From NCBI RefSeq assembly GCF_001194135.2, contig NC_068987.1, positions 36,651,382-36,696,560 of the forward strand: DNA of 45,179 nt. Reading direction: 5' to 3'. The stretch comes from Octopus bimaculoides. Its lineage: Eukaryota. This document shows, one piece after another, positions 11,038-39,023 of this stretch. The notes beneath the pieces were generated by a model. It searched no databases, was not told where the DNA came from, and saw only the letters and a program-made list of their open reading frames with translations. Position numbers and translations under genes: made by a program. Every line of letters starts with the position of its first letter. Position 1 is the first letter of the stretch.

Positions 11038-11103
<66 letters not shown>
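11038..11103. repeat. (ATT)n microsatellite
   Basis: Perfect ATT run; source of the poly-Ile ORFs. Confidence 0.95.
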
Positions 11104-11104
<1 letters not shown>

Positions 11105-15750: not shown

Positions 15751-18679
15751 AGTAGGGGTAATCCCTGTTGATTACATATACACGTACACACACAGAGCCA
15801 CTCACATACACACGCACACACATACACACTTATGTGTATATATACTTCACTTATATATAATTTACCGTATTTACCGGTAGGCTGCGATTTGGAGTGGTGG
15901 ACAGGTGAGACACATCACTTCAAATATATACCCACACACACACATATATATGTGTGTGTGTGTATGCGTGTATAAAATTTAAAACACAACAAACAAAAAA
16001 TTTTACAAAAGCATGACAAACAGAAAATAAGTAGTTAATTCCTCATCAGTCAACGACTAAAAGATCATTGAAATATCATGCCTTTAACGTTGATACTGTT
16101 CCTTTTTTGTGGTGCCAGTGGAGAAAAACGACAGGGAAAAGCTAACGAATGTACAGGACAATGATGAAAACAAACATGGCAAAATAAAATATACATATAC
16201 AACAAAAAACAGTAGGACCGCAAGACAGACGGATATGGAGCAACGCAAAGGAAAGTTATATACATTGAGAGGTGGTGAGGAAGACAGACAGACAGACAAG
16301 CAGGCTGACTGATAGAGACAGAGACAGAGACAGAGAAAGGTTTGCGGCCATATCACATTGAAAACAATAGTTCTCTCTTGATCAGTGATGTTACGCAACA
16401 TCGAGACTACTTAATTAGTTACACGGTGACACTTGAGAAATTTTGGTATTGTATGCAAAGTCTTTAGTTTAAAATGCAGACATGCTGTGCCGTTAAGACG
16501 TTTGCTTTGCATTCAATTTACGAAACTTGTTTGCCCTGCTCAAACAATAATTATAAGCTATCCAACTTCAGGTTAATGTTCTTGAGGTGGACTAACAATT
16601 ATTGTTTACTTAATGATTAGCAGACATATTAATGGTGCCTTTATTCTTCTTCAAAACTTTACGTTTATTAACTACCATATCAAATCCTGTCAAAAACAAC
16701 AAGCAACAATCTACTCCAAATAATCCGCCTTTTGCATCATTATTTTCAAATACTTCCAAACACGAATCTGTTTTCTCTTATTTCTGGATAATACCTAAAA
16801 CCCTCACTCTTTGTTTTGAATAATTTGTTTGGCCAGGCTGCTCTTTAATTTTCAAGTCTTTCAATAGTTATTATCTGCTCTTACAGGAAATCAAATTTCT
16901 TTGTCACGTAAGCCTTGACTCGTCTCTTTTAATTTATATTCAATCTCTACTTGCCTATCTCACATATTCCTCGTATGTTTATATCCTTCACGCAGAGGTC
17001 GAGTTCAGTGCTATTCTCATCTGTATCTCCTAGTCAGCCTCATTCTCTACTCATATCCTATATTGATAACACCAAACCTCTAAATTTTCTTTGTTTTTTT
17101 TTTTGTCTATCCCTCAATGGCAACTCTCATAGTATCTGTAGATTCACATCTAGCAGAATTGTATTATGCCACGTTATTTACTAGTTCTTTCGACCCAAAG
17201 ATCTTCGTGGGAATCGAAATTGTTAACATGTGTTTCTCATAAGAACCACATTGCCACTATTATATACAAAATTTTTAGTTAAATTTCTAGGAACTATAGG
17301 GTAAAATATGTATTATAATGTTTTACCTTACCTTTAATCAGAAACAAATTTCCTTTGATCTTTTGCAAGTAAGTGTCCTGTGTAATTAACTTGACACTTT
17401 GCACTAGAAATATATGTATTGGATACGATGCCCAACACTATTAACAGAGCAATTGTCACAATGTAAAGAGACAACGTTTTACAACACCCTACCTATTCAT
17501 AAATAGGACACAACTAAGTCCCAAAAGCCAGAATAATTTATGATGCCCAATACAAACGACTAAATGTTCTATCATGGTAATAAAGCTACTTCTGAAAAAT
17601 TACGCTTCCATTTTAATAACTATTTAAGGTCCAGTGAGTAACTCGGCTTCTACGAATTTCAACTACGAATCAGATCTTTTACTGTATTGTTCACATACCT
17701 AGAATGGTACACAAACTATACACTCAAACATCTTTAATCTTCTCAAAATAAAAGTCATTCTCGTCAAAGGCTCCCACCAACTAGTTACAGTCATTGGTCA
17801 CAACGATGTATGTATGTATGTATGTATGTATGTAACAGGTTTCCATAGTGTTTCCATAGGTCTTGTGCATTGGGACTGAAACCCAAATCATCTGGTGGCA
17901 AAAAGAACTTCTTAATCACACAGGCATGTTGGTGTCTATTGATAACAGATTTGCCAAATTATTGCCACTTCTTAGAACAATCTTCTTAAATTTCCTTCTA
18001 TCTAGCAGTTTCATCTTAACTTTATATCCTTCAAATACTAATATTTCAAATTATGTGTATGAAATATAGTAATTATCCTTGAAATTACAAAATTACAGTT
18101 GCCCAGCACCTTTTTTTTGTTGTTTTTATTTCTTAAACCCCTTTACTGAAATAATACCGTATGCTTCGTAACAGGATATGGATATCTCATCGTTTATAAA
18201 GATATATATTATACAGTCCTCTACATCTTCACCCCAAATGTACGTCATATTTTTCATTCCTCTCTTCGGTCTCTTTTCAACTACTGATGGTAGTAATTGT
18301 GATGAGTGTAGAGATGGTAGGAGTAGAACGTCATTTCCTCACATATTTTCTGATGGATGAAAGTTAGTCACACATATTTATATTAGTGTTAAGTGTGGTT
18401 GTGATTGATAAAATGATTCTACGGGACAAAATAATTTACATATTTTTGACTATCTAAACATCAATGAATGTGTTAAGCTATCTTAGGACGACTATTAATT
18501 ATATTTAACCTCAGATTACCTGTGAACGAGCAGATCAACAATCAATGGCATTCCAGCCTTGATCGTCCTGTATTTTATGTAAACATAATGTATTCAAAAC
18601 TACATTATCTACAGTGTTATTTCTTTGAGTCGTTATTTAGCTCCAGATTAGACATCATCCAGCATATCTCTGAATAAAG

Positions 18680-20300
18680 ATGACTCGGCTGCGATCAACC
18701 CACCGTTTAAGCGTTTATCAAACTTTTTATCTCAAACCGCTTTACACTACCTGATCTCTCTAATGTTAATGACGGTAATTTGTTATTCAAGAACATTTTG
18801 GCTGCGATCTCTGGAATGTGGTCAAGTCATTATTTTGTTGCTTGTAGGATTTTTCGAAACCTACCGAGGTTTCCAATCTGCATTCTTCATATATATTTTG
18901 TTTCTTTACAGCCATGTAAACACGTTCAGCTGAACTTCTCTTCCTCAGCTACTTACTATGATCTGATATATCTTTATTAACAGACAGAATATTATAGTAT
19001 CTATACATTGATACCATTTTTTTTTCGTAATAGAAACAAATTATTAGTTTAGTGTTTTTGCAGCCACTCGTTTTGCTCACATTGGTAGGATCATTGTTGC
19101 TCAAATATTTGAGATGGACATTTTATTATCTTATTAAGATTTTGGTGCAATGTGTGAATGAAATATGGAGACGTTTTATCCAGAAATGTTAGATTTTTGT
19201 CTAATCCAGCTTACATCTAATAGCGTTTTGCGTTTATCGCTTGCATTATATGTTCCGCTGCAATATTTCTTATTTCTCATGATACTATTCAATATTTCTC
19301 TTGTTTTATGTTTTGTTATCTGCTTCCAATATATTTTTTCAAAATGTCAGTATTTCTTGTTCTCTAATTTGTATTTTGTTATATTTTGTTAAACTCTCTG
19401 TAAAATGTTTCCTTTATCTTCCTAGAACATTTTATTTTGTTTGTTTGCTTCATTCTTTTATCAAATCGATGTATTCTAAAAATTCCGTTTTCACCTGATA
19501 AATTAATCATTGCTTCTTTATTTCAGTTGTTCATCATTAATGTTAAAACTTCTATACAGCATTAGTTCTTTTTTTTACTTACCTTTTTTTTTTATATTCT
19601 TTGTTATATTTCTGGCACTCAATTGTTATGTATTCTTATATCTTTTTCTCTTTCTGTTGATTTCCTGTTCAAGTTTTCGTCTCGACGCTAATTTCTGATT
19701 TATGTTTTCTTATTTTCTCAAAGATTTCTACACCATTAGTTTAGTTATAACACACAGTGTAGTGTACATTAGTTTATTCATACCCAATATACTTGTGCCT
19801 TTTATTTCTTCTAGAAATATTTACAATGCAATGGTAACTTACCTAAGAAGGTGTTCTCTTCTCAGATGTAACATTATCTTCCTAGTCTTTTATGAATGTT
19901 ATCACTTCAGTTTTGTGTTTTATTTTGATATCCTCTCTCGAACTTTATAACTGGCTTTTCATTAACACGTATTAATGTCCTATTTGGTTTACCTAATTCT
20001 TACTTGAGTGTGTTGTTGCGTTTCTCTTGTTTTAAGTTACTGCTATTGTTGTATTGTTGTGTAGCACGTGTTTCGACGGTTTTTTGTGTGATATCCATTA
20101 TTGTCCGTTGCCATTACCCGCTATGTTGTGTTTCATTACTTCTTTTTTCATATTTTCTTATTCAGTTATTATTACTGAGTTTTTCGTAAAAAGTATTTCA
20201 TTTTCTTTGATAATGTTATGCTCAAAATTCGTACACAGGTATTGTGGTTATTTGTGCTACCCAATATAATAGAACAGTTATGTAATCATTTCGGATGGTT
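18680..20300 (-). mobile_element. Highly decayed R4/Dong-like LINE
   Basis: Minus-strand remnants RKLEQEINRKRK (~19645-19680), RFDKRMKQ..QNKMF*EDK..FYREFNKI (~19382-19470) and GCKE(Q) (~18900) match R4/Dong ORF N-terminal and RT motifs as I recall them. Ends are approximate. Confidence 0.6.
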
Positions 20301-23300
20301 TTAATGTGAAAGTAATTTTTTTTAATGTAAATCCTCAATTGTCGCTAAGATCAGAGTCAATCTCGGTAGAACATGTCTTTGACCAAAAACATTCCCACCA
20401 TCAACACATCGTATTTACACACAAATTAAATATACCTATCAACATTTGAACCTTGTACCTTTTCTTAGAAGTTAGGGTGTAATTTAAGAGGGTACTGGCT
20501 CTTATTTCTATCTTATCGGCTGACCACGTTATGGCTTTTTCATTGTCTTTTATATGACTATATTCATCAGGCAATAAAGAAGAAAGTTAAGTTCGCAATA
20601 TTCAACAGTTAACTTCATATGTCAGAAAAGATCTGCTCAATACAGTCTACTATATCCAGAATGGATTTTATCATTAAAATTTGCTACATTCACCAGTTGA
20701 TATCATACACCTGAGGTGTATGATATGCTTTTTAAAGTTCACATAAAACCTCGGTCTGGTTTTAAATCCCATGATATTTACCAGGAATCTTTCAAAACAG
20801 GACTGGATGTAGTTATTTAGGTTTACAATTTTCCTCAAAATTTGGTGTTAAAAACCATAGTGAATCTGATCAACAACCGTTATTATACACACCAGATAGC
20901 ATTGAAGAGCAGAAAGAACCTGGTATTCAAAGTTCATTATATTCAGTATTTGATTTCAAAGACAAGGGTGAATAGGTGAATATGATTTTGAAAATTCACT
21001 ATATAAATACTTGATTTAATGACTGGAATGCATTTAGTATTCAGGTTACATCATGCTTTTCATTTAAATTAAATACAAACACTGATCTGTTCTTGGAATT
21101 TCAGAAACTAAACTGGTTGACATTAAAAATCAGAGATGATCTGGTTTAAAGTTTACAAGTTTCACTAGTTTACTTTACAGATCAGGGTAATTTTGAAGAT
21201 CGACATGGTAACTTAAAAGACCAGTGTGTATCTTATCTTTGGTTGGTCTTTAAAACCACTATATTCACTAGATGAGAGTAAAAACCAGAGTGAACATGAA
21301 CTTTAAACTCCATCATATGCATTTTCACCATCTGACTTTAAAAAGCTGAAAGGATTTAGTTTTTAAAGACCTCTATATTCACCAAATGACATTAAATGTA
21401 AGAGTGATTCAAATCTTTAAAATCCTATTGTAGTCACCAGATGTCTTCCTATAAGGCAGATCTGGATATGATCTTCAAAATCAAATGTATTTCCCAAATG
21501 ACTTTAAAAACCAGATAGAATTTGCTTTGTAAATTCCAATATATTAACCTGCTGACATTAAAAACCAAGGTGGATCTGGTCTTTAGTGTCTATAATAATT
21601 ACCAAGTAACTTTAAAGACAACAGTTGAAGTAGTTTTTAAAACCCACAATAGTCACTTGTCAGCATCATATACGTGAGTGGGTTTGGACATTGAATTATG
21701 TTATATCACTATATAACTTTAAATAACACATTGGATCTGTGATTTAATGTCTGTTATATTTACAATTTCACATGAGCCACTAGAATAGATTTAGTCTTGG
21801 AATCCACTACATTTCACAGTTGACTTTAAAGAGTAGAATGGAGTTGATCTTCATTGTCCACTATATCCTCCAGGTGACTTTAGATGGGATCTCTTCTTTC
21901 AATTCAACATTTACCAGATGACTTTAAAAACCGGAGTAAACCACAGTAAACTTCATTATATTCACCAGCTAATTATACAGATTTAAGTGGATTTAGTTTT
22001 CAAAGTTCACTATATTTATGCAATAGACTAAAACTCACAGTGAAGTTTGTCTATAAATTCAACTGTATTCATCATATGACTGTTGGACCTGTTTTTAAAA
22101 TTCACTATGCTCAGCAAAATATAAAATATCACAAAGATTTTGTATTCAAACTGGTGTATACATCAGATGATTTTAGAAAGAAAATGTCAGGTCTTGAAAG
22201 TGCACTGTATCCGCAAGATGACTTTCAAGAATAGATTTGATCTAGATTTAAATTTCATCATATTTAGCTTTATATTTTTAATGCCACAAAGAATTTGGTC
22301 TTTAAATAAACTGTATTCATCAGATAGTTTTAAAACCAGATTCTTAAAAGTGAAATATATTCACCAGATGACTTTAAAATCAAGAAATTGTGTGGTCTGT
22401 AAATTCTTCTATATCCACAAGTTTTATTACAGTTTGAATTTGAAAATAAAGGATTCAGAAAGGTTTATTTTGCCCACTGTATTCACCAGCTGATTTCAAA
22501 AGCAAGAGGTGATTTTGGCTTTAAAAAACTCTATAAACACACCAGATGAGATTTCAGAACACAAATGAGTTAGGCTTTTAAGCTATTCCATACACCAATT
22601 AGCTTTATATATCAGAGTGTACCCAGTCTTGAAATATCCCTATATTTATCAGAGGGGTTTAAAAACCCGAGAGCATCTGGTCTATAAAACTGACCACATT
22701 CATATTTAACTTCAGCAACCAGACTGTCTAGTTGAATTCCATTATATTCAATATTTTATTCTAAAAACTGGAGTGAATTTGGCTTTCAAGTCTGTTATAT
22801 TCATCTGTTCACTTCAGACTAAATTTGGATGTGGCTTATAAAGTCACATATTCTCACCAAGTGACTCCAAAGACCAGAGTGCAACTGGTCAGTAAATTCC
22901 ACAATATTCACCAATGGACTTTACAGACCAGAGTGAATCTTGTCATTAAAGTCTGTAATTTTCACAAGATGACTTCAAAATCAGTAAGGTTGTGGTCTTT
23001 AGTGTCTACTATATTTACCAATTAACTTTATAGAGCAAATAACATCTAAATTTTTATTCCACTGCAGTATAGATGACCCCACACTGCAGAAAGGATCTTA
23101 CTTTTCAATCAACAGTTCTCATCAAATGATTTTAGAAACCAGAATAGATCTAGTCCTTAATGTGTTCAATATTCATCAAATAAGTTTTGAGACAAGAATG
23201 GACCTGGTATTTAATTCCACTTTATTCAGAAATTGACTTCAATCCATAGTGAATCTGGTTGTAAAGTCCAGTACATTGTCCTGGTGACATTAAAAGCCAA

Positions 23301-24704
23301 AGAGTAACAAATGTTTAAAGTCCAGAATACTCACCAGTAGATGACAACAGTAGATGTAAATTTAAAATTCACAATATTCATTAGTCAACAAAATATACCA
23401 GAGTGGATCTCATCTTTTAATTCTGCTCTGTTACCAGATGAATTTAAGTAGCAAACTGGATCTTGTTTAAAAATCCACTATGTTTACTATTTGACTTGAA
23501 GAATCTGTATGGATCTCGTCTTGGAATTTCACCATATTGATCAGTAGAGTATAAAACCCAAACCACACTGGAACTTAAAATATTTACAAGCTGACTTTAG
23601 AACCCAAAGTAAATTTAAATATAATTCGACATATTCAACATATTCAATTAAAAACTAGAGTAAGTCTGATTTTCAAATTTACTATTTTCACTATTTCGTT
23701 TTAAAATTTGTATGTATTTATTCTAGAAAGTTTGCTATATTCACCAGTTAACTTTAGAAACAGAGCGTATAAATTCCAATATACATAGTAGTTGAAATAA
23801 TTGGATTTTGATATAAAAGAGATCTTGTTTTTGAAACAAATGTAGTCACCAGAGTAGACTGGTATTTAAAGTACATTATATCCATATGATAACTTCAAAA
23901 AACAAGGGTGAATCTGGTTCATTATATTAACCAATTAATTATACAGAATGAAGTAGATCTGTTAAGTCTACTATATGCACATGTGATAGAAAATCAGAGT
24001 GAATATTGTTTTTAAAATTAACTGTATTCAATATTTAACTTTAAAAATCAGTTTGAATATGGTTATAAAATTGACTATAACCACTATTTCAAATCCCAGA
24101 GTAGTGCTAGTCTTTGGGCCCTCTGTGTTCAACATAATTTTAAAAACTTTAGTGAGTCATCATTTTATTGGTTCCAATCATTTATTTAATGTCAACTATA
24201 CCATTGATAGCACAAAATACTAGGTAAGTTGTATGTGAAGGCTAGAATGATCACAATAATATGTTTCTGAGCTTGCATATTTTTATATATTTGCCATTCA
24301 GCTTCAGAAGCCAGGGTGCAAGTGCTCTTTAACATCTACCATACTTGTTTATTAACTTTAGAAACTAGAACAGATTAACAATTAAACATCGAAACTTGCA
24401 TGAATTTGGTTATTTAAAGTACATGGTATTCACCTGCTGAGATTATTAAAAATTCAAAGTGGATCAGTCATTAAACTCCACTATATTCATCAATAGACTC
24501 TACTGACCTGAGTAGATGATGTTTATAAAGTTAACTGTCTGACTTTAAAAATCAAGATGGTTCTGGTTTATAAATCCAATAAAAACTCAGTGTGGACCAG
24601 GTCTTTCAAGTCCCTTATATTCATCAAAGGAGTTTATGAATATAGTCCATAGGTGAATATAAGTCCACCTATGGACTTTAAGAGTTCTAATTTTAAAGTC
24701 CATA

Positions 24705-24899
24705 GGTTTAGATGTGATTGTATGGTAAGAAGTTTGTTTCCCAACCACATGGTGCTGCATTCAGTCCCACTATATGGCACCTTCGGCAAATGTCTTCTAA
24801 TATAGCACCGGGCCCAACCAAAGTCTTGTGAGTGGATTTGATAGATATAAACTTAAAAGAAGCCCATCATATAAGTGTGTGTGAGAGAGAGAGAGTGTG

Positions 24900-24932
<33 letters not shown>

Positions 24933-25207
24933 ATGTATCTGTGTGTGCGCATGTGTGTGTGTCTGCGTGTTTATGTGTATGTATGTCTTTGTGTCTGTCT
25001 CTTTCCCCCATCACCACTTAACAATCAGTGTTGGTGTGTTTATACCCACTGTAACTTAGCAGTTTGGTAAAAGCGACCAATACAAGAAATACCAGACTTT
25101 AAGAAGAAGCACTGTGGTCAACTCATTCAAATAAAAATTCTTCAAGGTGGTACCTCAGCATGACCACAGTCTAATGACTGAAACAAGTAAACAATAAAAG
25201 ATAAAAA
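24705..25207 (+). mobile_element. CORE-type tRNA SINE with internal (GT)n, inserted in the array
   Basis: Head tgtatggtaagaagtttg..., CORE-like gcaccttcggcaaatgtcttcta, central GT microsatellite, and tail ...gactgaaacaagtaaacaataaaagataaaa. Confidence 0.85.
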
Positions 25208-26302
25208 AATATCTCTCCAAATGACTTTTAAATTCTAGAGTTGTCTATAAATTACACTTTATTCAGCACTTAATCATAATCTATCTTTAAATTCCACTCT
25301 ATTTAACAGTTGAATTTTAAAATTCAAAATCTATCTGATTTTTAATCTAAATTTACCAGATGAGTTTTTGAAACATGAGTGTATTAGGCCTTTACTAACC
25401 TAGAGTATTTAAAAAGTGAAAACTTTAAAGTGAAAACTATATCTAGTTTTAATAATCCGCTTCATTCAACATTGTCAGGGTTGAATGCCCATTATATTCA
25501 ACTGTTGAATTGAAAGACTAGAGGGTTGTTGGACATTAAAGAACACTATATTCTCCATTTGACTTTAAAAACAGTGTGGATCTGGTTTATAAATCCAATA
25601 AATTTGCCTATTGGTTTTCAAAACTTCAGCATGGACCAAATCTTTCAATTTCATTATATTCACTAAAGGAATTTAAGGAACACAATTCTAATCTTAAGTT
25701 CATTTATACAAGATATAGCTTCAATAACCAAGGTCTTCATGATTTTTAATGTCTACAATTTCTTCAATTAGACAGACCAGAATAGATCTCATGCTTAAAA
25801 TTCAATGTATTTAATGGTTGGCTTTACTAATAAGAGGAGATTTTTATCTTTGAAATAAACCATGTTCAGCAGTTGGCTTTACAAACCAAAGGAGATCTGT
25901 TCTTTCATGTCTATGACATTCACTAATTGAATTCAAATACAAGAATCCATGGGTTTTTAATGTCGACTATACCCTCTAATTGCATTTATAAAGAAGAGTG
26001 GATTTAGTCATTAAATCCACACTATTCACTACTTCTCTTTAAGGACCAGAGTGCATCTGGTCTTTAAAGTCCAACATATTCCCTAGTTGACATTTAAAAT
26101 CAGTGTGGATCTCTTTTTTAAAATGCACTATATACACCAGTTGAATTTAGAAACCAAAGTGATTCTCAATATTCACTAGATTACAGAAAGTGCAAGAGTG
26201 GATCAGGTTTTAAAATCTACTATACTCACAATTTGAATTTAGTTCCCAGATTAGATCTGGTCACTAATGTCTACTATATTTTCAACGACACCATTGATAA
26301 GA

Positions 26303-26725
26303 TCAGCTGCGGCTGTATGGTAAGAAATCTGCTTCCCAACTACATAATTCCAGGTTCAGTCCCATTGTGTAGCACCTTGCCTTCTTCTGTGGCCTTGGGC
26401 TAACTAGACCTTTGTGAGTGTATTTGTTAGACGAAAACTGTAAGAAGCAAATCGTGTGTGTGTTGGGGATGTGTGCATGTGTGTGTGTGTGAGCATGTGT
26501 GTCTTTGAGCATGTGTTTGTGCCTATGTTTGTCTCTCACCAACTCTTGACAACTGGTGTTGGTGTGTTTACATCCCTGTAACTTAGAGGCTTGTCAAATG
26601 TAATCAATAGGATAAGTACCAGGTTTAAAAATAAGTCCTGAGTTTGATTTATTTAACTAAAATTCTTCAAGGTGGTGTCCCAGCAAGGCTGCACTCTAAT
26701 GAGTGAAACAAGTAAATGAGAGAAA
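26303..26725 (+). mobile_element. CORE-type tRNA SINE, inserted in the array
   Basis: Same head, CORE, GT tract and tail organisation as 24705-25207. Confidence 0.85.
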
Positions 26726-27288
26726 AAATGAGAGATAACAGATGGATGAAGTTTAAAAAAGGGGAAACCGACATTGAAGACAAACAAGAACGCATCTGGT
26801 CCTCAAAGTTCACTTTCTTTTAACTCTAAATTTTAAAACAGACTTTATATCATGTTTAAAGTTTATTTTATGCTCAAGTTGACTTCAGTAATAATCTGCA
26901 TCATTTGATCTTAATAACCAGAGGAGATTTCATCTTTAAAGTCTACTACTTTCATCATTTGCTTTTAAAAATCAAGGTGGTTTTACTCTTTTAAGTTGCT
27001 TTTAAAAACCAGTGTGTTTCCGGTCTTTAAATAAGTCTATATTAAGCACTTGACTTTAAAGTCACTGTAGATATATACACCGATCATCATTAAATACCCA
27101 CGTGGATTTGGTCCTAAAATCCTCTATATTCACCCTTTGACATTGAAACCAGAGTGTATATGTTATTCAAAGTCCAATACATTCATCAGTTGCCTTCAAA
27201 AGTTATACAGATCTTGTCTTTGAAGTTCACTATATTAACCAGTTGACTCTAGTTAGCTTTAAAGGCCAGAGTGCTCTGTTCTATGACA

Positions 27289-28257
27289 TCTATACTATAT
27301 ATAAAACAGAGATGTGTGTGTAATCGCTTTTCACGTGAAATCGACTTCACCAAATGCTTCCATACTTGTGATGCATGATACTTGTGATGCATGAACAATT
27401 TGACCTCAGATAAATGTTAGGCTCTTCATTTGATTTTTTTAATTAAAAATAAATAATATTGCTTTATATTTAAGATTCACTTCTTTAAAAAGGTTCCTCA
27501 ATGTCAACTTCCAGTATTGACGTAACAACGGCAAAAAGCTTCACTCTCTATTTTGTGTGTGAGTGTGTATGAGAGAGAGAGAGAGAGAGAGTAAATACTA
27601 CATACACACCGCTCTCTCACTCTGTCTCACACACATACACACGCACACACACACCCCTTCACTCACTCACACTCTGTCTCTTACAAACACATACATACAT
27701 AAATGTATACAAACATATTTACCAAGACACACATATGTATGCGCGTGTGTGCGTGTTTGTAAGAGACAGAGTGTGAGTGAGTCAAGGGCTGTGTTGTCAT
27801 ATGCATACATCCAAAGATGTATGTATATTTATGCATGTACGTATACATGACAACAAACCTCTCTCTCTCACTCACACTGTCTCTTACAAACACACACATA
27901 CATAAATGTATACAAACATATTTACAAAGACACACGTGTGTATGCGCGCACACGTGCGTACATGCGTGGGGGGTTCCACAATCGCCATTTATTTCAATTA
28001 CTCTTGTGAGGATATTCACGTAAATCATTTTTTTCATTTAATCCCCATTTTAATTTTTGTAAAAGTTTCCAAGTACCAATGAGGCTTTTTGGCACATCTT
28101 CAATTTTTCCCATTCATGAGAGGCGCCCAGCCATCATTCATCTGAGAGTCCATCTACAGAATGTCCTCAAATTTCTATACAGCATATTTTGCCTTTTTTT
28201 TCTTCAAGTATATAAGCAATAATTTCATTCCCGAGCAATGCCGGGTACCTCTGCTAG
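27289..28257 (+). mobile_element. Non-autonomous Helitron
   Basis: 5' TCTATACTATATATAAAA, 3' hairpin cccgagcaatgccggg followed by CTAG (28254-28257). Inserted between A27288 and T28258 with no TSD. Joining the flanks restores a 54-bp array unit. Confidence 0.9.
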
Positions 28258-28362
28258 TACATTATATTCTCCAACTGACTTGGCAGAACAAGTGGATCTG
28301 TTGTAAAATGTTCACAGTTGACATTAGAAAACTTTAAGAGCCAGAATGCATCAGGTCTTTAA

Positions 28363-28581
28363 CACTTTAGCATTTAACGCAGCCATATTTAACCCAAATA
28401 TTCTACCCATTTTATGTTAAAAGTGGTCAGATCTAGCCTCTCACATGTACCCTACAATGTCATCTAAAAATAAGCAATCACATCATCAAAATCGTGAAGC
28501 TATGAGATAATGCATGATTAATTCAAAATAATGTGACTAAATAAGCATTACATTTGATAGAGTAATTTCAATGCTAAACAA
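28363..28581. mobile_element. piggyBac-type MITE
   Basis: ttaa|cactttagcatt ... aatgctaaacaa|ttag: decayed CCCTTTAGCATT-type TIRs and a TTAA-type target site. Confidence 0.75.
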
Positions 28582-29640
28582 TTAGTGTTCATAATATTTC
28601 CCAAGAGATATTATAAAAAACAGTATGGTCTAGATTTTTAAAATCGTTATGTTCATCAATTGCCTTTAAAAAATTAGAGCAGATCTATTCTTTAATCTAC
28701 TATTTAATTGCATTCACCTGATAACTTCAAACCCTCAAAAGATCTGGTGTTAAAAATTCCTCTTCTATTCACCAGATGTCTTTAATATTCACTATATTCG
28801 GCATTGATTTTTATAACCAGAGTTGATCTAGTGTGTAAAGTTTAGTATATTCAACAGTTGATTTCAGAGAACATGGAGCACGTGGATTTAAATTAGCTAT
28901 ATATAATATAACATTTGTTATTATCAACCACAGTTTCTCTGATCTTTGAATCCATGATATTTAACAATTCACTTTGAAAACAAGAGTCTGCCTGCTCTTT
29001 AATGTCCACTATATTTCCCTGATGACTTGGAATGCAAGAGTAGTTGTGACATTTAGAGTCTGCTGAATATTTTTGTTGGCTTTAATTCTTTTCATAGCAA
29101 CCCACTTAAAAGAGACATGACTCTTATCATACAAGCTATCTGGTTAAACTGATCTAAATTAAAATTTCCCCTTGATATATGAAGCATCAACTGAATGACA
29201 AATTCAAAATTCTTTAAAAATTAATTGAAATAAGGAAAGTGTATCAAAAATATCTGTCTTCACAAATAGACTTTATTGTATGGTACTGTTACTACACATT
29301 TCTCACTCAGAGATTTAAAACTAGTTGTTTTTCTCTTTACGAGATCAGCAACTGTATGTGACTTTAAAACTATATATTGTGAGCAAGGTTGAGTGGTGGT
29401 TGTTCTCAAGGAAGAGAAATAACCAAGGAGCCAGTATTCTACAGGTATTGCTAAGGCTAGAAAAGGGGCAGTAGACTCCCTTGCTCACAGTTTATGGACA
29501 CAGACCATGTGTCAGTAGCCAGCTGGAAATGATGTTTTCCTGGTAAACTAAACTAAAGGCTTAAAAAACAAACTGTATCTGTTCTTTAAAAACCATTCAA
29601 TACATTTGATAACAGCACAGCATTCAACAGTTGAATTTAG

Positions 29641-29790
29641 CCCTTTAGTATTTAAACCAACTATATCTGGACCAAATATTCTACCTGTTTTATGTTCAAA
29701 CTCGGCAGATCTGTCCTCTCACTGTACAGTGTGATACCTAAGCTAAAAAATCACATCATTACCAAATTTAAAGCCTGAATGAGACAGGTT
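29641..29790. mobile_element. Partial second copy of the piggyBac-type MITE
   Basis: ccctttagtatttaaacc...ccaaatattctacctgttttatgttcaaa...tctcac is colinear with 28363 onward. Confidence 0.7.
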
Positions 29791-29869
29791 TCTGTTAGAG
29801 GCCCATGAAACTTTAAGTCACATGGAGCCAAATCAAACTGTTTTCAATAATATATACATATATATATAT

Positions 29870-31727
29870 ATATTTGTTTTGCAAGATTTTTGATGTGAAA
29901 TCGTGTGTTGAAACAGATGTTGTTTTATTTGGGGATGGTCATATTGCCAGTTTAGCCAATAAAAAATACACGCACTGTATATTTGGTGTTAATTTGCTTA
30001 ATTAAATGAACATTGGAGGGAACTTAAGGAAGAGAAGAGCTCATCAGTTCTGTACCAGCATGCTGAACAGGATCACAGAGGCTCACTCAACAACACAGAA
30101 ATTAAAATCTTGTCCACACATAGAACAGATGCAGCACTTAGACAAATTACACTAGCTACACACATAATAGAAGATAAACCTAGCCTGAATAGGAAACTGG
30201 AATGGAACACTAACACACACCCCTAACAAACCACAACATATGACAATAAATTTCCCATAAACCGATAACAATATGAACAAAATATAATACAATACATAGA
30301 TAAACAAATAGAATTAAATACAACATACGTTAACAAAATTAAATTAAATACAAAACAAAACAAAAAAGAAATAGGTATAAACACATGAACAAATAAATAA
30401 ATAAAAACAAAAATAAACGAACATGTATTAACATTGAATATAGATAATACAGGCACTCCCCATACACACACATGNNNNNNNNNNNNNNNNNNNNNNNNNN
30501 NNNNNNNNNNNNNNNNNNNNNNNNNNNNNNNNNNNNNNNNNNNNNNNNNNNNNNNNNNNNNNNNNNNNNNNNNNNNNNNNNNNNNNNNNNNNNNNNNNNN
30601 NNNNNNNNNNNNNNNNNNNNNNNNNNNNNNNNNNNNNNNNNNNNNNNNNNNNNNNNNNNNNNNNNNNNNNNNNNNNNNNNNNNNNNNNNNNNNNNNNNNN
30701 NNNNNNNNNNNNNNNNNNNNNNNNNNNNNNNNNNNNNNNNNNNNNNNNNNNNNNNNNNNNNNNNNNNNNNNNNNNNNNNNNNNNNNNNNNNNNNNNNNNN
30801 NNNNNNNNNNNNNNNNNNNNNNNNNNNNNNNNNNNNNNNNNNNNNNNNNNNNNNNNNNNNNNNNNNNNNNTATATATATACATATATATACCTTATGTCA
30901 TAAGAATTTAGAAGGTTTTGGAATATGTAATAATCCTTTATAGAAATTGTAAATTTCAGAGCAAATATATATCATAGAGGGGGAGAGACAAGCAAGTGCA
31001 GGTATGGTTGTTTACTTAAGGATTTTGCTTCCTAACACTATTTTTTTGAGTTTAGTTCAATGTGTACTGCTACATGATGTAAGTCTCTTTTTTATAGCTG
31101 TGGGCCAAATGAAAGCTTTGTGCATAGGTTTGTTAGATGAAACTTCACAATGACCAATAGTCGTAGATAAGCAAAGTCATAGTTTTCCAGTATTCCTTAG
31201 AAACATCATCTTGCCATTATCTGGCTTGCTGAAAATAAGAGCAGCCAAGGTAAGAGCAACTGACCATAGAAGACCTACCACAACAAATTCCAGCTGACCC
31301 ATGCAAGGAAAATAAAGGTGATGTATATAAATACACACACACAAACATACATATNNNNNNNNNNCATGAACAAATAAATAAATAAAAACAAAAATAAACG
31401 AACATGTATTAACATTGAATATAGATAATACAGGCACTCCCCATACACACACATGGACTTACAAAACATAGACACACATAGAGGGATACAAAATACAAAA
31501 TACAAAATGGCTGATCGTTAGCAAGGAGGGACACACATAAGAAAGAAAAAGCAAAGAACCACTGATGAGGTCACAGAAGTGTGACGAAAGAACTCTAGCC
31601 GAAATAGGATTAATGTAATGTAATGTAATATAAAGCTGAAGCAAATTAACACCAAATATACAGAGCGTGTGTTTTTTATTGGCTAAACTGGCAATATGAC
31701 CATCCCCAAATACAACAACATAATATA
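29870..31727 (+). mobile_element. 5'-truncated Penelope-like element with an inverted terminal-repeat segment (gapped)
   Basis: 30002-30226 is open: LNEHWRELKEEKSSSVLYQHAEQDHRGSLNNTEIKILSTHRTDAALRQITLATHIIEDKPSLNRKLEWNTNTHP*, resembling a GIY-YIG C-terminus. 29917-29999 is a near-exact inverted copy of 31639-31721. A hammerhead-like core lies at 31562-31595. Confidence 0.7.
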
Positions 31728-32857: not shown

Positions 32858-33009
32858 AGGAACAACGTGGCTATGTGGTAAGAGCTTGGTTCCCAGTTCA
32901 TTCCCACTGTGTGGCACCTTAGGCAAGTACCTTTTACTATAGCTTCAGGCCGACCAAAGCGTTGTGAGTGGATTTGGTTTGGTTGGCGACAACTGAAAGA
33001 TACCAGTCG

Positions 33010-33075
<66 letters not shown>

Positions 33076-33378
33076 TGTGCGTGTGTGTGTATGTATGTAT
33101 GTATGTATGTATGTAGGCATGTGTGTATGTGCGTGTTGTGTAAGTGTGTGTGTAAGTGTGCGTGTCTTTGTGCCTAAGTCTGTCCCCAACACCGCTCAAC
33201 AACCACTGCTGGTGTGTTTATATTCTTGTAACTTGGCGGTTCGGAAACAACGAATGATATAATAAGTAGAAGGCTTAAAAAATAAGCCGCGTGGTCGATT
33301 TGTTCGACTAAAACTATTTAAGGTGGTGCTCCAGCATGGACGCACACAAATGGCTGAAACAAGTAAAAGATAAAAGAT
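32858..33378 (+). mobile_element. CORE-type tRNA SINE with expanded GT/GA/GTAT middle
   Basis: Same family structure as 24705-25207. Confidence 0.85.
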
Positions 33379-33764
33379 ATATATATACATATANNNNNNN
33401 NNNNNNNNNNNNNNNNNNNNNNNNNNNNNNNNNNNNNNNNNNNNNNNNNNNNNNNNNNNNNNNNNNNNNNNNNNNNNNNNNNNNNNNNNNNNNNNNNNNN
33501 NNNNNNNNNNNNNNNNNNNNNNNNNNNNNNNNNNNNNNNNNNNNNNNNNNNNNNNNNNNNNNNNNNNNNNNNNNNNNNNNNNNNNNNNNNNNNNNNNNNN
33601 NNNNNNNNNNNNNNNNNNNNNNNNNNNNNNNNNNNNNNNNNNNNNNNNNNNNNNNNNNNNNNNNNNNNNNNNNNNNNNNNNNNNNNNNNNNNNNNNNNNN
33701 NNNNNNNNNNNNNNNNNNNNNNNNNNNNNNNNNNNNNNNNNNNNNNNNNNNNNNNNNNNNNNNN

Positions 33765-34738
33765 TGATTTTGTCGACTACACAGTATGATAGGGATAGTT
33801 GCCCACCGTCTAAGAGAAAGACAGCACCATAACGCAATTCAATCTGACAGAAATTTGGAAAAAACACGCTGAACTGCTTGACATTCGTGCCGAAGCTCCA
33901 ATGCAAATATTTCCGAGTGTTTGGGTGTCAATCAGAGGACAGTACAAAGGATTTAGAAAGAGTTGGATGAGAGTCTAATGGTGATTAAGAAGATACGGCA
34001 GCTTGGAAAACTCACTCTGATTGTTCTGATAAGAAAAGAATTCCTGAATTTGTTGGTGAGATCCAGGCCATGATTGACTACGATCCAAGTCAATCAGGTC
34101 TATCGCCAGAGTTATCGGAGTGTCTAAGTTTCTTATCAGGCATGTAATACATGAAGGCATTCGGTATTCCTCATGCAAGATGAGAAAGGGCCAATTCTTA
34201 TCCAAAGCCACCAAGAATACAAGGAACGCTACAAAGTTTTTGAACAAACTCAAGAATCCTCTCCAACCGAACATGCTTTTGTTTTCCTGAGACGATAAAG
34301 ATTTCTGCCAGGATCAGATGTTAAATACACAGCACAACCATTTGCTTGCCGTGTCTCCAAAACGTGTACCGAGAGTGATAAAAATCAAACATCCCGTCAA
34401 CATCATGGTGTTTGGAATGATGACTAGTGATGGCAACGTTATGTCTCCATTCATCTTCCCACATGACCTCAGATTCAGCACATGGGCCTACATTAAGTGC
34501 CTGGAGGAGGTAGTGTTGCTGGAAGACCCGATGGCTGGCAACAGAACTTTGCACCATGTTACACAAGCAGGAAAACCTAGTCATGGCTGTCAGACAATTT
34601 CTGCGACCACATCACTCCTAACATCTGGCCACCTAACTACCCAGACTGCAACACCCTTGATTATATCTGTTATAATGAGTTATCAGTGCTATTTTCATTT
34701 TTGCGTAATTTAGACGACAATTTATTCACCGCACCCTG
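33765..34738 (+). pseudogene. Tc1/mariner (maT/DD37D-like) transposase pseudogene with right TIR
   Basis: KHPVNIMVFGMMTSDG..PFIFPH..YIKCLEEVV and WPPNYPDCNTLDY (~34626-34664). Right end ...caatttattcaccgcaccctg|TA. The left end is lost in the gap. Confidence 0.85.
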
Positions 34739-34749
34739 TATATGCATAT

Positions 34750-34985
34750 ATATTTATGTCTATGTATCTTTGTGTCTGTGTTTGTCCCTCTATCATTGCT
34801 TGACAACCGATGGTGATGTGTTCATGTCCCCGTAATTTAGCAGTTCGGTTGAAGAGACCGATAGGATACCTACTAGGCTTACAAAGAATAAGTCCTGGGG
34901 TCGATTTCTTCGACTAAAATCCTTTGGGGCGGTGCCCCAGCATGACCGCAGTCAAATGTCTGAAAGGTGTAAAAGAATAGAATAT
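34750..34985 (+). mobile_element. 3' half of a CORE-type SINE
   Basis: tttgtgtctgtgtttgtccc...cttgacaaccg...ggggtcgattt...ccccagcatgaccgcagtc matches the 3' half of the SINEs above. Confidence 0.8.
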
Positions 34986-34990
34986 ATATA

Positions 34991-35130
34991 CGAGGGGAAG
35001 TAAAAAATTACCCGCACTTTCGTCATAACATATCTTTATTATTGTCACACTACCTTCTGCGCATGCGTGTTTATAGTTGGTACTAATGTGGTCATGTATT
35101 CAAATTTTGAGCCTGATCGCGCTATTTTTG
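34991..35130 (+). mobile_element. Probable left end of a mariner-type non-autonomous element
   Basis: TA|CGAGGGGAAGTAAAAAATTACCCGCAC resembles mariner-type TIR starts. No partner TIR was found. Confidence 0.45.
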
Positions 35131-35523
35131 TTTCTGGCTTTACAGTGTGACAGTGTATGCACACGCGCATGTGTGCTCGTGTGCGTGTGTGTGTGTGCGC
35201 GCGCGCGCGCGTGAACGGTGCCTTTTAAAATCAGCAAATAGTGTATGTATTATAAGTATATACTTCAGACTAGAGATTTCCATTGTATTTCAGAAGTGAC
35301 ACGAGTTTGCCACATTAATAAACTGCACCTATAGCGAAATGTGGCATCTGTCGCTTCCATGATTATCTCTAGTGTGATTTCATTTGGCCTAGTTCTGAAG
35401 AATATTTATTTTATTAACTTAATATTATACATAAAGGGATTTTTTCCGAAAGGTAAAGTTGCAACTTCTAGCATTTAAACAACACACATAAGTTAAGTAT
35501 ATATTATTGACTATATATATTCA

Positions 35524-36778
35524 TTAGGTTGTCCCAGAAGTAATGGCCGATTTCAGAAACATAAATTAATAATAGAAATGTTTTGATTAGTCAAAGTATG
35601 AGCCGTGTACATCTATGCATCTCTGCCATTGATCAACAAGATTATTTATGCCTCGTTGATAAAAACTTACTGGCTTTGATGCTAAGAAATCTTTGAAAGT
35701 TGATTCAACCGCTGGTTTAGACCTGAAAGTTTTATTACTTAAAACGTGCTTAAAGGCTTAAAAAACGGTTTTCAGTCAGTGAAAGATCAGGAGAATATGG
35801 AGGATGTGGTAAAGACTTGTATCCCACGTCTGTGAGTTTCTGCAGCGTCATTCTTGCAACATGTGACTTTGCATTATCGTGGAGCAGAATTGGGCCACGC
35901 CTATCTACCAATGCAGGCCTCATTTTTTGCAAATGAGCATGCATTTCATCGAGTTGATTGCAGTAAACCTCTGCTGTAATGCTCTGACTGGATTCTAGAA
36001 AGCTGTAATGGAGAACACCAACTGCAGACCACCAGACAGTCACCATAATCTTCTGGTGATGCAACTTTGACTTTGGGAAATGCTTGGGGGACTCATCACG
36101 GCCAAGCCATTGACCTGGTCGTTTACGGTTATCATAAAAGATCTACTTTTCGTCACAAGTGACTATTCGGTCAAGAAAAGGATCGTTGGTGTTTCGTAAA
36201 AAGAGCTTCGAGCACACTTCAAAACACCGAACTTTTTGATTTTCATTGAGCTCGTGCAGTACCCATTTATCGAACTTTTTCACCTTACCAATCTTCTGCA
36301 GGTTGCGTGAAACCTTTGAAATACCGATACCAAGTGCCTGAGACATTTGTCTGACACTCTGACGTGGGTTTTGTTCAACAATTGCTTTCAGTTGTTCATT
36401 GCCAACACTGTATGACCGTCCTCTACCTTCCTCATCTTCAAGGCTCTCATCACCACTACAGAATTTCTGAAACCACCTTCGTACTGTGCGATCACTTGTG
36501 GACCCCTCTCCTCACGCCCTGTTGACATTGGCAGCAGTTTGGGGGGTGTTGTGCCCAAGCTTGAACTCATGCAAGAAAAGAAGCGAAAGTCCTTTTTTCG
36601 TCATGTTCATAATTAAGCTTCAAGAATGTTTTCTGTCGGAAATAAGTAGAAAATTATCAAAGAGCATATATCAATTATCAAGTATGTCGAAATTCACCTA
36701 CAATATAATTAAAATACTATGATTAAAATTGCGTTTCAAAACACAACACTTAGAGCGGCCACTATTTTCGGAACCTAA
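35524..36778 (-). pseudogene. Mariner (DD34D-type) element with transposase pseudogene (~36604 to 35587)
   Basis: TIRs ttaggttgtcccagaagtaatggccg / cggccactattttcggaacctaa|TA. Minus-strand motifs LHEFKLGH, RIVTCDEK, KIMVTVWWS, LLHDNAKSH and HPPYSPDLS, with frameshifts. Confidence 0.9.
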
Positions 36779-36784
36779 TATAAA

Positions 36785-37000
36785 CTGGCAAGCTTGCAGA
36801 ATTATTAGCACTCCGGACAAAATGGTTAGTGGTATTTCATCCGTCTGTACATTCTGAGTTCAATTTCTGCTGAGGTTGACATTCCCTTTCAGCCTTTTGG
36901 GGTCGATAAAATAAGTACCAACTGTGCACTGGGATTGATGTAATCAACTTATTCACACCATTGAAATTGCTGGCTTTGTGCCAAAATTTGAAACCAATAC
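36785..37000 (+). mobile_element. tRNA-derived SINE (same family as the 11104-12145 stack)
   Basis: gcagaattattagcac...ctgagttcaa...cctttcagccttttggggtcgataaaataagtacc...gtgccaaaatttgaaacc. Confidence 0.85.
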
Positions 37001-37508
37001 ATGTATGTGTGTGTGTGTGTGCAATGTATTTATTGCACAGTTTTCTTTTAAATATTATTCATAAAGTATCTGTTATGCTCACTGCTTGGTAGAAGAGATT
37101 TGCCCAGAGTATCGCACTGAGATGTGGAACACAGGAGCATGACGGTATAAAATTACCAACTTAACCACACAACCATATTAGTGCAGGAATATAAAATTAG
37201 CAATTGCATTTTTCCAATGAATTATTCAACTGACATAGAGCAACATACAAACATTGTCTTTTTTTTCTATAGCAATCGTATTTGTATTGCGGATTCCAGT
37301 ATTGTGTCGCCTGGTGAGACAATTTAGAAAAGTAGGGGAAATGTGGTATAAAATAAAATAACATATAAACGAATCCATTTCCTAAATTAATAACATTACT
37401 AAACATACACACACACACACACACTCACTCACTCACTCACAGAGACAACCACACATATACACATATGCATACATATTCATATATGTTTATGCATTATTTG
37501 TTCATGTG

Positions 37509-38974: not shown

Positions 38975-39021
<47 letters not shown>
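38975..39021. repeat. (AAT)n microsatellite
   Basis: Perfect AAT run. Confidence 0.95.

Positions 39022-39023
<2 letters not shown>

What the first reader, a model, noticed from the sequence alone, without database searches (positions are those of the whole stretch)
20530..29640. ~9-kb ancient array of a 54-bp unit, each unit containing an inverted repeat
Seen: about 110-120 units with a strict 54-bp period and heavy divergence. In the consensus, actttaaaaaccaga-gtgga-tctggtctttaaagt is a 15-bp inverted repeat (one mismatch) around a 5-nt loop, followed by a ~19-nt linker (ccactatattcaccagttg). A well-preserved example is 26037-26069 (ctttaaggaccaga gtgca tctggtctttaaag). Inference: the period has survived long enough for SINEs, a Helitron and MITEs to insert. 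A transcript could fold into a chain of hairpins, a possible substrate for ADAR (very active in coleoids) or for Dicer. As DNA it could be a cruciform or protein-binding array. It could equally be a neutral satellite born from a small palindromic MITE. I do not recognise it as a described repeat.
Basis: partly seen in the sequence, partly recalled or inferred. Interest (0 to 1): 0.7.

Follow-up and report, generated by a model that had tools for sequence, protein, structure and literature searches.

The report
Decayed 54-bp palindromic tandem repeat relic
A 9-kb stretch of an octopus-type genome is the worn-out remnant of about 120 head-to-tail copies of a 54-base unit that once carried a hairpin-forming palindrome; the hairpin is eroding like neutral DNA, so this looks like an ordinary dead satellite array and not a working RNA or DNA structure.

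Summary
Window 20530-29640 contains about 6.3 kb (about 117-121 units, all on the + strand) of a 54-bp tandem repeat. Its consensus is GACTTTAAAAACCAGAGTGGATCTGGTCTTTAAAGTCCACTATATTCACCAGTT: a 16-bp stem with one mismatch, a 5-nt loop and a 17-nt linker. About 2.8 kb of later insertions interrupt it.

The period is not strict. Unit lengths run from 39 to 66 nt, and only 20% are exactly 54.

- **Equal decay:** arms, loop and linker are equally conserved (0.72, 0.69, 0.75, 0.75).
- **No covariation:** 61.8% of arm cells pair, against 62.3 ± 0.8% in shuffles.

Present units keep about 8 of 16 pairs. They fold no better than random 54-mers (-6.3 vs -5.9 kcal/mol; the consensus gives -18.1).

Unit-to-unit identity is a flat 0.60 at every distance. 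That points to one amplification burst roughly 90 My ago or more, then independent AT-biased decay with no homogenisation.

Two SINE-like copies and two TTAA-flanked insertions sit in the array. Three of the five insertions keep the 54-bp phase across the junction.

No relative was found, but no cephalopod genome could be searched.

Verdict: a neutral relic satellite of low interest.

The parts
20530..29640 (+). Whole locus: a relic tandem array of a 54-bp unit together with later insertions.
   Evidence: Autocorrelation peak at lag 54; wraparound alignment scoring 2892 bits; HMM hits confined to this span.
20587..24639 (+). Array block 1, about 75 units and the longest uninterrupted stretch.
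   Evidence: Dimer-HMM coverage; unit table.
24640..25213 (+). Interruption I1. It holds a small foldback-like piece (about 24636-24712) and a SINE-like element (about 24713-25209). The element has a B-box-like motif, an internal (TG)n tract and an A-rich tail.
   Evidence: 72-73% identical to copies at 26314-26729, 32890-33387 and 34753-34986; sequence read; relatives in the O. sinensis locus L002.
25214..26281 (+). Array block 2, about 20 units. It includes the best-preserved hairpin unit at 26035-26088.
   Evidence: The unit at 26035-26088 folds at -19.5 kcal/mol with z=-5.4. The region 25507-26289 folds with z=-5.2.
26282..26779 (+). Interruption I2: a second copy of the same SINE-like element. 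The array phase is continuous across it (about column 52 on the left, column 53 on the right).
26780..27298 (+). Array block 3, about 10 units.
27299..28255 (.). Interruption I3: a complex insertion with microsatellites and a long hairpin (arms 27649-27698 and 27745-27794). It also has a 90% direct repeat (27649-27745 and 27853-27948). Array phase is not preserved across it (column 7 on the left, column 34 on the right).
28256..28362 (+). Array block 4, 2 units.
28363..28583 (.). Interruption I4: a 221-bp MITE-like element with terminal inverted repeats (..TTTAGCATT / AATGCTAAA..). It sits at a TTAA of the unit (columns 30-33 are duplicated: TTAA on the left, TTAG on the right).
   Evidence: Junction phases go from column 33 back to column 30. 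A second copy lies at 29641 onward, 79% identical over the 86 bp that BLAST aligns.
28584..29085 (+). Array block 5, about 9 units.
29086..29560 (.). Interruption I5: a 475-bp insertion flanked on both sides by TTAA (unit columns 5-8 are duplicated). No clear terminal inverted repeats were seen.
   Evidence: Junction phases go from column 8 back to column 5; sequence read.
29561..29640 (+). The last 1.5 array units. The right edge abuts the second copy of the I4-type MITE (29641 to about 29850).
   Evidence: Dimer-HMM hit at 29561-29638, E=0.0034; alignment A3.

Best explanation
This is the neutral relic of an ancient tandem (satellite or minisatellite) array in an octopod genome.

A 54-bp founder unit happened to contain a 37-nt near-perfect palindrome (16-bp stem, 5-nt loop). 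It was amplified head-to-tail to at least 120 copies in a single short burst. Since then the copies have not been homogenised. Each one has decayed independently under AT-biased mutation and small indels.

The array has passively collected transposon insertions. Its two TTTAAA motifs per unit offer TTAA targets.

The hairpin is a property of the founder sequence, not something selection keeps. The locus most likely does nothing today.

Shown: the array, the consensus, uniform decay, absence of covariation, the star-like relationship of units, and insertion after amplification.

Inferred: the amplification mechanism (saltatory, such as unequal exchange, replication slippage or rolling-circle copying, perhaps helped by fork stalling at the palindrome), the age, and the lack of function.
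For: 1. Real array.

2. Uniform decay. The mean frequency of the consensus base is 0.72 in the left arm, 0.69 in the loop, 0.75 in the right arm and 0.75 in the linker. What predicts loss is base identity: C and G columns changed in 38-42% of cells, A and T columns in 18-20%, mostly as C>T and G>A.

3. No covariation. On my alignment, Watson-Crick pairing is 0.577 vs a shuffle mean of 0.582 (z=-0.5). Double changes that still pair number 48 of 114, vs 46.7 expected. On an independent MAFFT alignment, 61.8% of cells pair vs 62.3 ± 0.8%, with 393 of 500 shuffles at least as high. The covariation score is 0.135 vs 0.141.

4. The hairpins have mostly gone. A mean of 8.4 of 16 pairs remains. Unit MFE averages -6.27 kcal/mol, against -5.92 for random 54-mers from the window and -18.1 for the consensus. 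Only 15% of units reach z<-2. The stretch 22601-23338 folds with z=-1.3.

5. Star-like history. Pairwise unit identity is 0.595 at unit distances 1 to 80, and its sd of 0.063 is close to the binomial 0.068. There is no higher-order repeat and no neighbour effect.

6. Age. Identity to the consensus is 0.736, giving a Jukes-Cantor distance of 0.325. That is about 90 My at the 0.0036 per My used for Octopus (rate from PMC13282606). It is a lower bound, because the better-scoring units were selected.

7. The array is older than its insertions. The two SINE-like copies inside the array are 72% alike, about 48 My per lineage. Phase is continuous, or shows a 4-column TTAA duplication, at I2, I4 and I5.

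8. Not coding. Only 13 of 23 in-phase units are open in the one open consensus frame, and there is no third-position effect.

9. No Rfam family matches the units.
Against: - A residual excess of structure remains in the best-preserved block (25507-26289, z=-5.2). Arm pairing at the true register (58-62%) exceeds slid registers (33-51%). Both are expected from an inherited palindrome, but they mean a transcript would still fold locally.
- Transcription, small RNAs, chromatin state and conservation of the locus in other octopods were not tested, so a sequence-independent role cannot be excluded. Examples are a heterochromatin block, a piRNA source or a spacer.
- There is a marginal strand asymmetry (A>G 119 vs T>C 90).
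- The star-like pattern could partly reflect saturation.
Confidence: 0.8

Rival explanations
1. The array is or was carried by a mobile element. It could be the internal tandem-repeat region of a non-autonomous Helitron/Helentron or another DNA transposon. It could also have been seeded by a small palindromic MITE whose two terminal repeats form the arms. This concerns origin and is compatible with neutral decay today.
For: In molluscs many satellite DNAs occur as short scattered arrays associated with Helitron parts (C. gigas satellitome, PMC8268682). The founder is a near-perfect 37-nt palindrome, the shape of a tiny TIR-loop-TIR element. The linker begins CACTA (sequence).
Against: No solo or differently arranged copy of the unit exists elsewhere in the 45-kb window or in 37 kb of two fetched loci, one from O. 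sinensis and one from an unidentified ENA assembly. No terminal inverted or direct repeats bracket the array. The flanks 17500-20530 and 29641-30474 are not repeated in the sample, apart from unrelated small elements. The sample is far too small to be decisive.
Confidence: 0.12
2. DNA-level role: the dyad-symmetric units form cruciforms or bind a dimeric protein. An example would be a former centromeric or heterochromatic satellite of the kind proposed to work through non-B-form DNA.
For: Dyad symmetries are a common feature of centromeric satellites in many eukaryotes (PMC5889037). The consensus stem is strong (-18.1 kcal/mol as RNA).
Against: The arms are no better conserved than the linker. 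Watson-Crick complementarity equals the shuffle expectation. Only about 8 of 16 pairs survive per unit. There is no homogenisation. The array is 6 kb and riddled with transposons, unlike a living centromeric array.
Confidence: 0.05
3. Functional RNA: the array is transcribed, and the chain of hairpins is used as an ADAR substrate or sponge, as a Dicer/siRNA source or as a piRNA precursor.
For: The founder unit folds into a 16-bp hairpin. A few units still do (26035-26088), and the block 25507-26289 folds better than shuffles (z=-5.2). The window is octopod, and coleoids edit RNA heavily (background knowledge).
Against: There is no covariation and no stem-over-linker conservation. The mean unit folds like random sequence. 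A 16-bp stem with a mismatch is short for Dicer and poor for ADAR even when intact (background knowledge). No Rfam match to the units. Transcription is untested.
Confidence: 0.03
4. Pseudogenised coding repeat: the unit once encoded an 18-residue peptide repeat (TLKTRVDLVFKVHYIHQL in the only open consensus frame).
For: One of the six consensus frames is open (and the sequence itself).
Against: At this AT content about 1.4 open frames of 18 codons are expected by chance (my estimate). Only 13 of 23 in-phase units are open. There is no third-codon-position excess of change. No protein in 5.8 billion clusters resembles the translated repeat, even at E<=10.
Confidence: 0.01

Closest known systems
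Satellite and minisatellite DNA whose monomers carry short dyad symmetries (survey by Kasinathan & Henikoff 2018, PMC5889037)
   Same: Head-to-tail array of a short monomer, one orientation, AT-rich, with an internal inverted repeat able to form a hairpin or cruciform in the consensus.
   Different: Living satellites are homogenised (concerted evolution), usually span tens of kb to Mb, and sit at defined chromosomal domains. Here units are about 60% alike with no neighbour effect, the array is about 6 kb, it is invaded by transposons, and the dyad is decaying at the neutral rate. Chromosomal position is unknown.
Mollusc satellite DNAs organised as short scattered arrays, often Helitron/Helentron-associated (C. 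gigas satellitome, PMC8268682)
   Same: Mollusc genome; a relatively short array embedded in transposon-rich euchromatin-like sequence instead of a heterochromatin block.
   Different: No Helitron-type flank or terminus could be shown. From my own knowledge, the bivalve monomers are mostly longer, around 150-170 bp. No second locus of this unit has been seen.
MITE-derived or foldback-derived tandem repeats (recalled from the literature, not checked here)
   Same: The monomer is dominated by a palindrome, as if two terminal inverted repeats had been joined by a short loop.
   Different: No solo MITE with these arms, no target-site duplication around single units, and no inverted second array as in Foldback elements. 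All units are on the + strand.
dsRNA substrates of ADAR formed by inverted repeat pairs, e.g. paired SINEs (background knowledge)
   Same: Repeats that could base-pair within one transcript.
   Different: Such substrates are long, near-perfect duplexes formed by oppositely oriented copies. Here the stems are at most 16 bp, mostly broken, and all units are co-oriented.

Membership tests
Tandem repeat / satellite DNA | Many head-to-tail copies of one unit in one orientation that share a consensus | tested here: met
   121 units, all on the + strand, with a 54-nt consensus.
Tandem repeat / satellite DNA | Ongoing homogenisation (concerted evolution; neighbours or higher-order units more alike) | tested here: not met
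   Pairwise identity is 0.595 at all unit distances from 1 to 80, with an sd close to binomial. This makes it a dead relic, not a living satellite.
Tandem repeat / satellite DNA | A family present at several loci or at high genomic abundance | not testable with these tools
   No cephalopod genome collection was available. There were 0 hits in 37 kb of two fetched loci (O. sinensis and an unidentified ENA assembly), in metagenome and viral contigs and in the protein collection searched with the translated repeat.
Structured (hairpin) RNA family | Compensatory or covarying changes that keep the stem | tested here: not met
   Pairing equals the shuffle expectation on two alignments.
Structured (hairpin) RNA family | Stem positions more constrained than unpaired positions | tested here: not met
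   Arms 0.72 and 0.75, loop 0.69, linker 0.75.
Structured (hairpin) RNA family | Copies fold more stably than composition-matched sequence | tested here: inconclusive
   Mean unit MFE is -6.27 vs -5.92 kcal/mol for controls, and 15% of units have z<-2. One 780-nt block gives z=-5.2 and another z=-1.3.
Structured (hairpin) RNA family | The sequence is transcribed | not testable with these tools
Known Rfam families (including miRNA precursors) | Match at or above the family's gathering score | tested here: not met
   0 matches at gathering scores over the whole window. At E<=1, nearly all sub-threshold hits lie in insertion I3, one in insertion I1, and a single chance-level hit (E=0.49) falls on array units.
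MITE-derived satellite | Solo elements with the same terminal repeats and target-site duplications elsewhere | tested here: inconclusive
   None in the window outside the array or in 37 kb of other loci. The sample is too small.
Helitron/Helentron-associated satellite | Array flanked by recognisable Helitron segments or termini that recur at other loci | tested here: inconclusive
   Flanks are unique in the sample, and no bracketing repeats were found. No Helitron library was available.
Centromeric dyad-symmetry satellite | Dyad symmetry in the monomer | tested here: met
   The consensus has a 16-bp stem with one mismatch. It holds in the consensus only.
Centromeric dyad-symmetry satellite | Large homogeneous arrays at centromeres bound by centromeric histone | not testable with these tools
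   There is no chromosomal placement or chromatin data. The local array is small and heterogeneous.

The most novel reading that the evidence does not exclude
The locus could be a stray, fossil copy of a still-living octopod satellite family with a palindromic 54-bp monomer, for example a centromere- or heterochromatin-associated repeat working through non-B-form DNA. Alternatively, the array could still be transcribed, with its surviving hairpins feeding small-RNA or editing pathways. Neither reading is excluded, because genome-wide copy number, chromosomal position and expression could not be examined.
Probability: 0.06. Interest if true: 0.5.

Novelty: new member of a known kind. Interest (0 to 1): 0.13.

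Why it matters
It matters little as biology. Decayed tandem arrays are a normal part of large, repeat-rich genomes, and this one shows no sign of selection.

It has three modest uses.
- It adds an apparently undescribed, TRF-invisible tandem family to octopod repeat libraries. Recent O. vulgaris annotation still leaves part of the repeat fraction unclassified (PMC13282606).
- About 120 copies started identical and decayed independently. That gives a clean internal estimate of the neutral mutation spectrum (strong GC-to-AT bias, indel rate) and a dating anchor of roughly 90 My or more. This pre-dates the 13-33 My O. vulgaris/O. bimaculoides split, so an orthologous array is predicted in other Octopus species.
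- It is a worked example of a conspicuous consensus hairpin that is inherited and not maintained.

Tried and rejected
- **Reads:** No RNA-seq, small-RNA, editing or DNA-read test was possible, and read laying was never usable.
- **TRF:** it misses the array almost entirely. A first iterated nhmmer profile drifted down to 40 columns, so I replaced it with a wraparound profile alignment.
- **Protein trick to find other arrays:** the one open consensus frame repeated six times, and a 13-row profile of translated units at E<=10, both found nothing in 5.8 billion protein clusters. All three protein searches are now used.
- **DNA pattern:** the hairpin-core pattern gave 0 matches in JGI metagenome contigs and in IMG/VR. 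It gave 10 matches with up to 3 mismatches inside the array, against 0 expected by chance.
- **Fetched loci:** the nearby mariner remnant led to one O. sinensis locus and one ENA locus. Neither contains the unit. I judged further random sampling of 20-kb pieces too unlikely to hit and did not do it.
- **Synteny:** no host-gene exon could be found in the window to use as an anchor. Only mariner and reverse-transcriptase remnants are present.
- **Literature:** no paper holds the core sequence strings or a 54-bp octopus tandem repeat. The O. vulgaris repeat paper describes no satellites.
- **Not run:** The search of protein representatives (my profile contains synthetic rows, and two related searches were already empty), and genome contigs (bacteria and archaea only).
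- **Readings considered and rejected:** a coding 18-residue repeat, a CRISPR-like repeat-spacer layout (the linker is as conserved as the arms), an assembly artefact (units are about 60% alike, so not a collapse or duplication), and a Foldback element (no inverted second array).

Full report

Yes. In window 20530-29640 the strongest autocorrelation lag is 54 (match fraction 0.330 against a median of 0.280, z=6.1). Lags 53 and 107 follow, and four control regions of the window show no such peak. A sliding scan puts the signal between about 20.8 and 29.2 kb.

TRF reports only 2.4 copies, at 22839-22965, because the units are too diverged. The repeat finder independently returns a dozen families whose copies lie 54, 107-108, 161... 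bases apart, all between 20598 and 29599.

The '-' strand hits all overlap + hits and reflect the palindrome.

A wraparound (cyclic) profile alignment converges on this consensus and threads the region at 2892 bits:

GACTTTAAAAACCAGAGTGGATCTGGTCTTTAAAGTCCACTATATTCACCAGTT

A dimer HMM built from that alignment gives 91 hits at E<0.01 in the region. It gives 0-1 in each of 20 context-preserving shuffles and none in the other 36 kb of the window.

**2. Anatomy**

Array-derived sequence lies in six blocks:
- 20587-24639
- 25214-26281
- 26780-27298
- 28256-28362
- 28584-29064
- 29561-29638

Together these make 6306 bp, or 117 unit equivalents. The alignment delimits 121 units. All are on the + strand.

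The consensus folds as a 16-bp stem (columns 1-16 with 22-37, one A-C mismatch at 10:28), a GTGGA loop and a 17-nt linker, at -18.1 kcal/mol as RNA. Its example at 26037-26069 is the best unit in the array (-19.5 kcal/mol).

The period is not strict. Unit lengths run from 39 to 66 nt, the mode is 53/54, and only 20% are exactly 54.

**3. Interruptions**

- **I1 (24640-25213) and I2 (26282-26779).** Both carry the same dispersed element, 72% alike. Further copies lie at 32890-33387, 34753-34986 and 42741-42935 on the minus strand. The element has a B-box-like GGTTCAGTCCC in the I2 copy (degraded to ATTCAGTCCC in I1), an internal (TG)n tract and an A-rich tail, so it is SINE-like. Relatives occur in an Octopus sinensis locus.
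- **I4 (28363-28583).** This is a 221-bp element with terminal inverted repeats. It has a second copy beginning at 29641, exactly at the right edge of the array, 79% identical over the 86 bp that BLAST aligns.
- **I5 (29086-29560).** This is a 475-bp insertion without clear terminal repeats.
- **I3 (27299-28255).** This is complex and microsatellite-rich, and contains a long hairpin.

Junction phases show that the insertions entered an existing array. Phase runs straight through I2 (about column 52 to 53). At I4 and I5 four columns are duplicated and read TTAA (TTAG on the right side of I4), which fits a TTAA target-site duplication. I1 and I3 are rearranged. Each unit offers two TTTAAA motifs.

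**4. Is the hairpin maintained?**

No, on every test I could run.

- **Equal conservation.** Across 98 well-aligned units the consensus base is kept at 0.72 in the left arm, 0.69 in the loop, 0.75 in the right arm and 0.75 in the linker. What predicts loss is base identity. C and G columns changed in 38% and 42% of cells, A and T columns in 20% and 18%. C>T and G>A are the commonest changes. This is the signature of AT-biased neutral mutation.
- **No covariation.** On my alignment, 57.7% of arm cells form Watson-Crick pairs, against 58.2 ± 0.8% when 3' partners are shuffled among units (z=-0.5). Among 114 cells changed on both sides, 48 still pair, against 46.7 expected. On an independent MAFFT alignment of 92 units plus the consensus (A1), the pair-counting tool gives 61.8% paired against 62.3 ± 0.8%, with 393 of 500 shuffles at least as high. 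The covariation score is 0.135 against 0.141. With about 1340 cells, an excess of 2 percentage points would have been visible.
- **Loss of fold.** Units retain 8.4 of 16 pairs on average. Their mean MFE of -6.27 kcal/mol is indistinguishable from the -5.92 of random 54-mers from the same window, and 15% reach z<-2.
- **Longer pieces.** Results are patchy. The stretch 22601-23338 gives z=-1.3 and 25507-26289 gives z=-5.2. Pairing at the true register exceeds slid registers. This is what an inherited but unmaintained palindrome leaves behind.

**5. History**

Pairwise identity between units is 0.595 whether they are 1 or 80 units apart. Its sd (0.063) is close to the binomial expectation (0.068). 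The most similar pairs are not neighbours. So there is no higher-order repeat, no local homogenisation and no staggered duplication. The tree is a star, which implies one rapid amplification followed by independent decay.

Identity to the consensus is 0.736, a Jukes-Cantor distance of 0.325. At the 0.0036 substitutions per site per My used for Octopus, this is about 90 My (PMC13282606, citing Albertin et al. 2015). It is a lower bound, because I selected the better units. The two SINE-like copies inside the array are 72% alike, about 48 My per lineage. This fits the roughly 56-My transposon wave reported for Octopus and an array older than its insertions.

**6. Organism and context**

A mariner remnant at 35563-36774 is 84.7% identical over 1.2 kb to an O. 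sinensis chromosome locus. Its best named protein hit is O. sinensis 'SETMAR-like'. Several dispersed repeats are shared with that locus at 75-88%.

It is a gapped draft assembly with seven N runs. I found no host exon, only transposase and reverse-transcriptase remnants. So the array is intergenic or deep-intronic, and no synteny anchor was available.

**7. Other readings tested**

- **Coding repeat.** One consensus frame is open (TLKTRVDLVFKVHYIHQL), but this is expected by chance at this AT content. Only 13 of 23 in-phase units are open, and there is no third-position effect. Nothing in the protein collection resembles it.
- **Known RNA.** No Rfam family reaches its gathering score. At E<=1, nearly all sub-threshold hits are generic hairpin models on the I3 palindrome. 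One lies in I1, and one chance-level hit (E=0.49) touches array units.
- **TE-borne array.** No bracketing terminal repeats were found, the flanks are unique in the sample, and there are no solo units. This is unresolved, because the sample is tiny.

**8. Relatives elsewhere**

None were found. I searched metagenome contigs and viral contigs with a 22-base core pattern. I also searched 37 kb of two fetched loci (O. sinensis and an unidentified ENA assembly), the protein collection and full-text literature.

None of these is a real search of cephalopod genomes.

**9. Verdict**

This is an ancient, dead tandem array whose founder unit happened to be palindromic.

The closest known kinds are satellite DNAs with dyad-symmetric monomers (PMC5889037) and the short, scattered satellite arrays of molluscs (PMC8268682). 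It differs from living members of both in lacking homogenisation and in showing no constraint on the dyad.

I file it as a new (undescribed, as far as I could check) member of a known kind, with low interest.

Noticed in passing
window 11086-12149; also 36791-37031 and 38389-38544 (-); L002 15066-15617: There are five head-to-tail copies (spacing 157-298 bp) of a roughly 160-180-bp unit with a tRNA B-box-like motif (GAGTTCAAATTCCGCCGAGGTCGAC). The same unit forms a 182-bp x3 tandem in the O. sinensis locus, at 80-91% identity. This looks like a SINE-like unit that occurs in small tandem clusters in both genomes.
   Followed up: partly
window 30384-30474 and 31365-31455: A 91-nt stretch is 100% identical at two places, each directly abutting an N run (30475-30870 and 31355-31364). 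This is probably a scaffolding or gap-closing duplicate in a draft assembly.
   Followed up: no
window 29917-29999 and 31639-31721; L002 16554-16656: An 83-nt inverted repeat is 96% complementary with 1.6 kb between the arms, and the second arm lies next to the N run at 31728. A related copy sits in the O. sinensis locus. It is either a dispersed element in inverted pair or an assembly inversion.
   Followed up: no
window 27635-27806 (inside insertion I3): A long CA/TG-rich hairpin (arms 27649-27698 and 27745-27794, 90% complementary) matches several unrelated miRNA-precursor models on both strands, well below their gathering scores. It is a generic hairpin, not evidence of a miRNA. A 90% direct repeat lies at 27649-27745 and 27853-27948.
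   Followed up: partly
window 28363-28583 and 29641 to about 29850: Two copies of one MITE-like element both start C(A/C)CTTTAG(C/T)ATTTAA immediately after a TTAA/TTAG of an array unit. This suggests a TTAA-targeting (piggyBac-type) family that used the array's TTTAAA motifs.
   Followed up: partly
window 24713-25209, 26314-26729, 32890-33387, 34753-34986, 42741-42935 (-): Five copies of one SINE-like family carry an internal (TG)n microsatellite and an A-rich tail. They are 68-73% alike to each other, with relatives in O. sinensis.
   Followed up: partly
window 34078-36774 and 38931-39714: There is a decayed mariner/Tc1-type transposase (Pfam Transposase_1 in its relatives; 84.7% DNA identity over 1.2 kb to an O. 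sinensis locus). A reverse-transcriptase fragment with a YMDD motif is also present. No host-gene exon was seen anywhere in the window.
   Followed up: partly
array units, 20587-29064: Substitutions away from the consensus are strand-symmetric except for a marginal A>G excess over T>C (119 vs 90, about p=0.05 before correcting for six comparisons). This could hint at past transcription of the + strand or be noise.
   Followed up: no
window 24636-24712: Just 5' of the first SINE-like insertion lies a small foldback-like piece with three copies of AGTCCATAGG, one of them inverted. It shares TTTAAAGTCCA with the array unit. It may be a rearranged unit or a separate tiny element.
   Followed up: no
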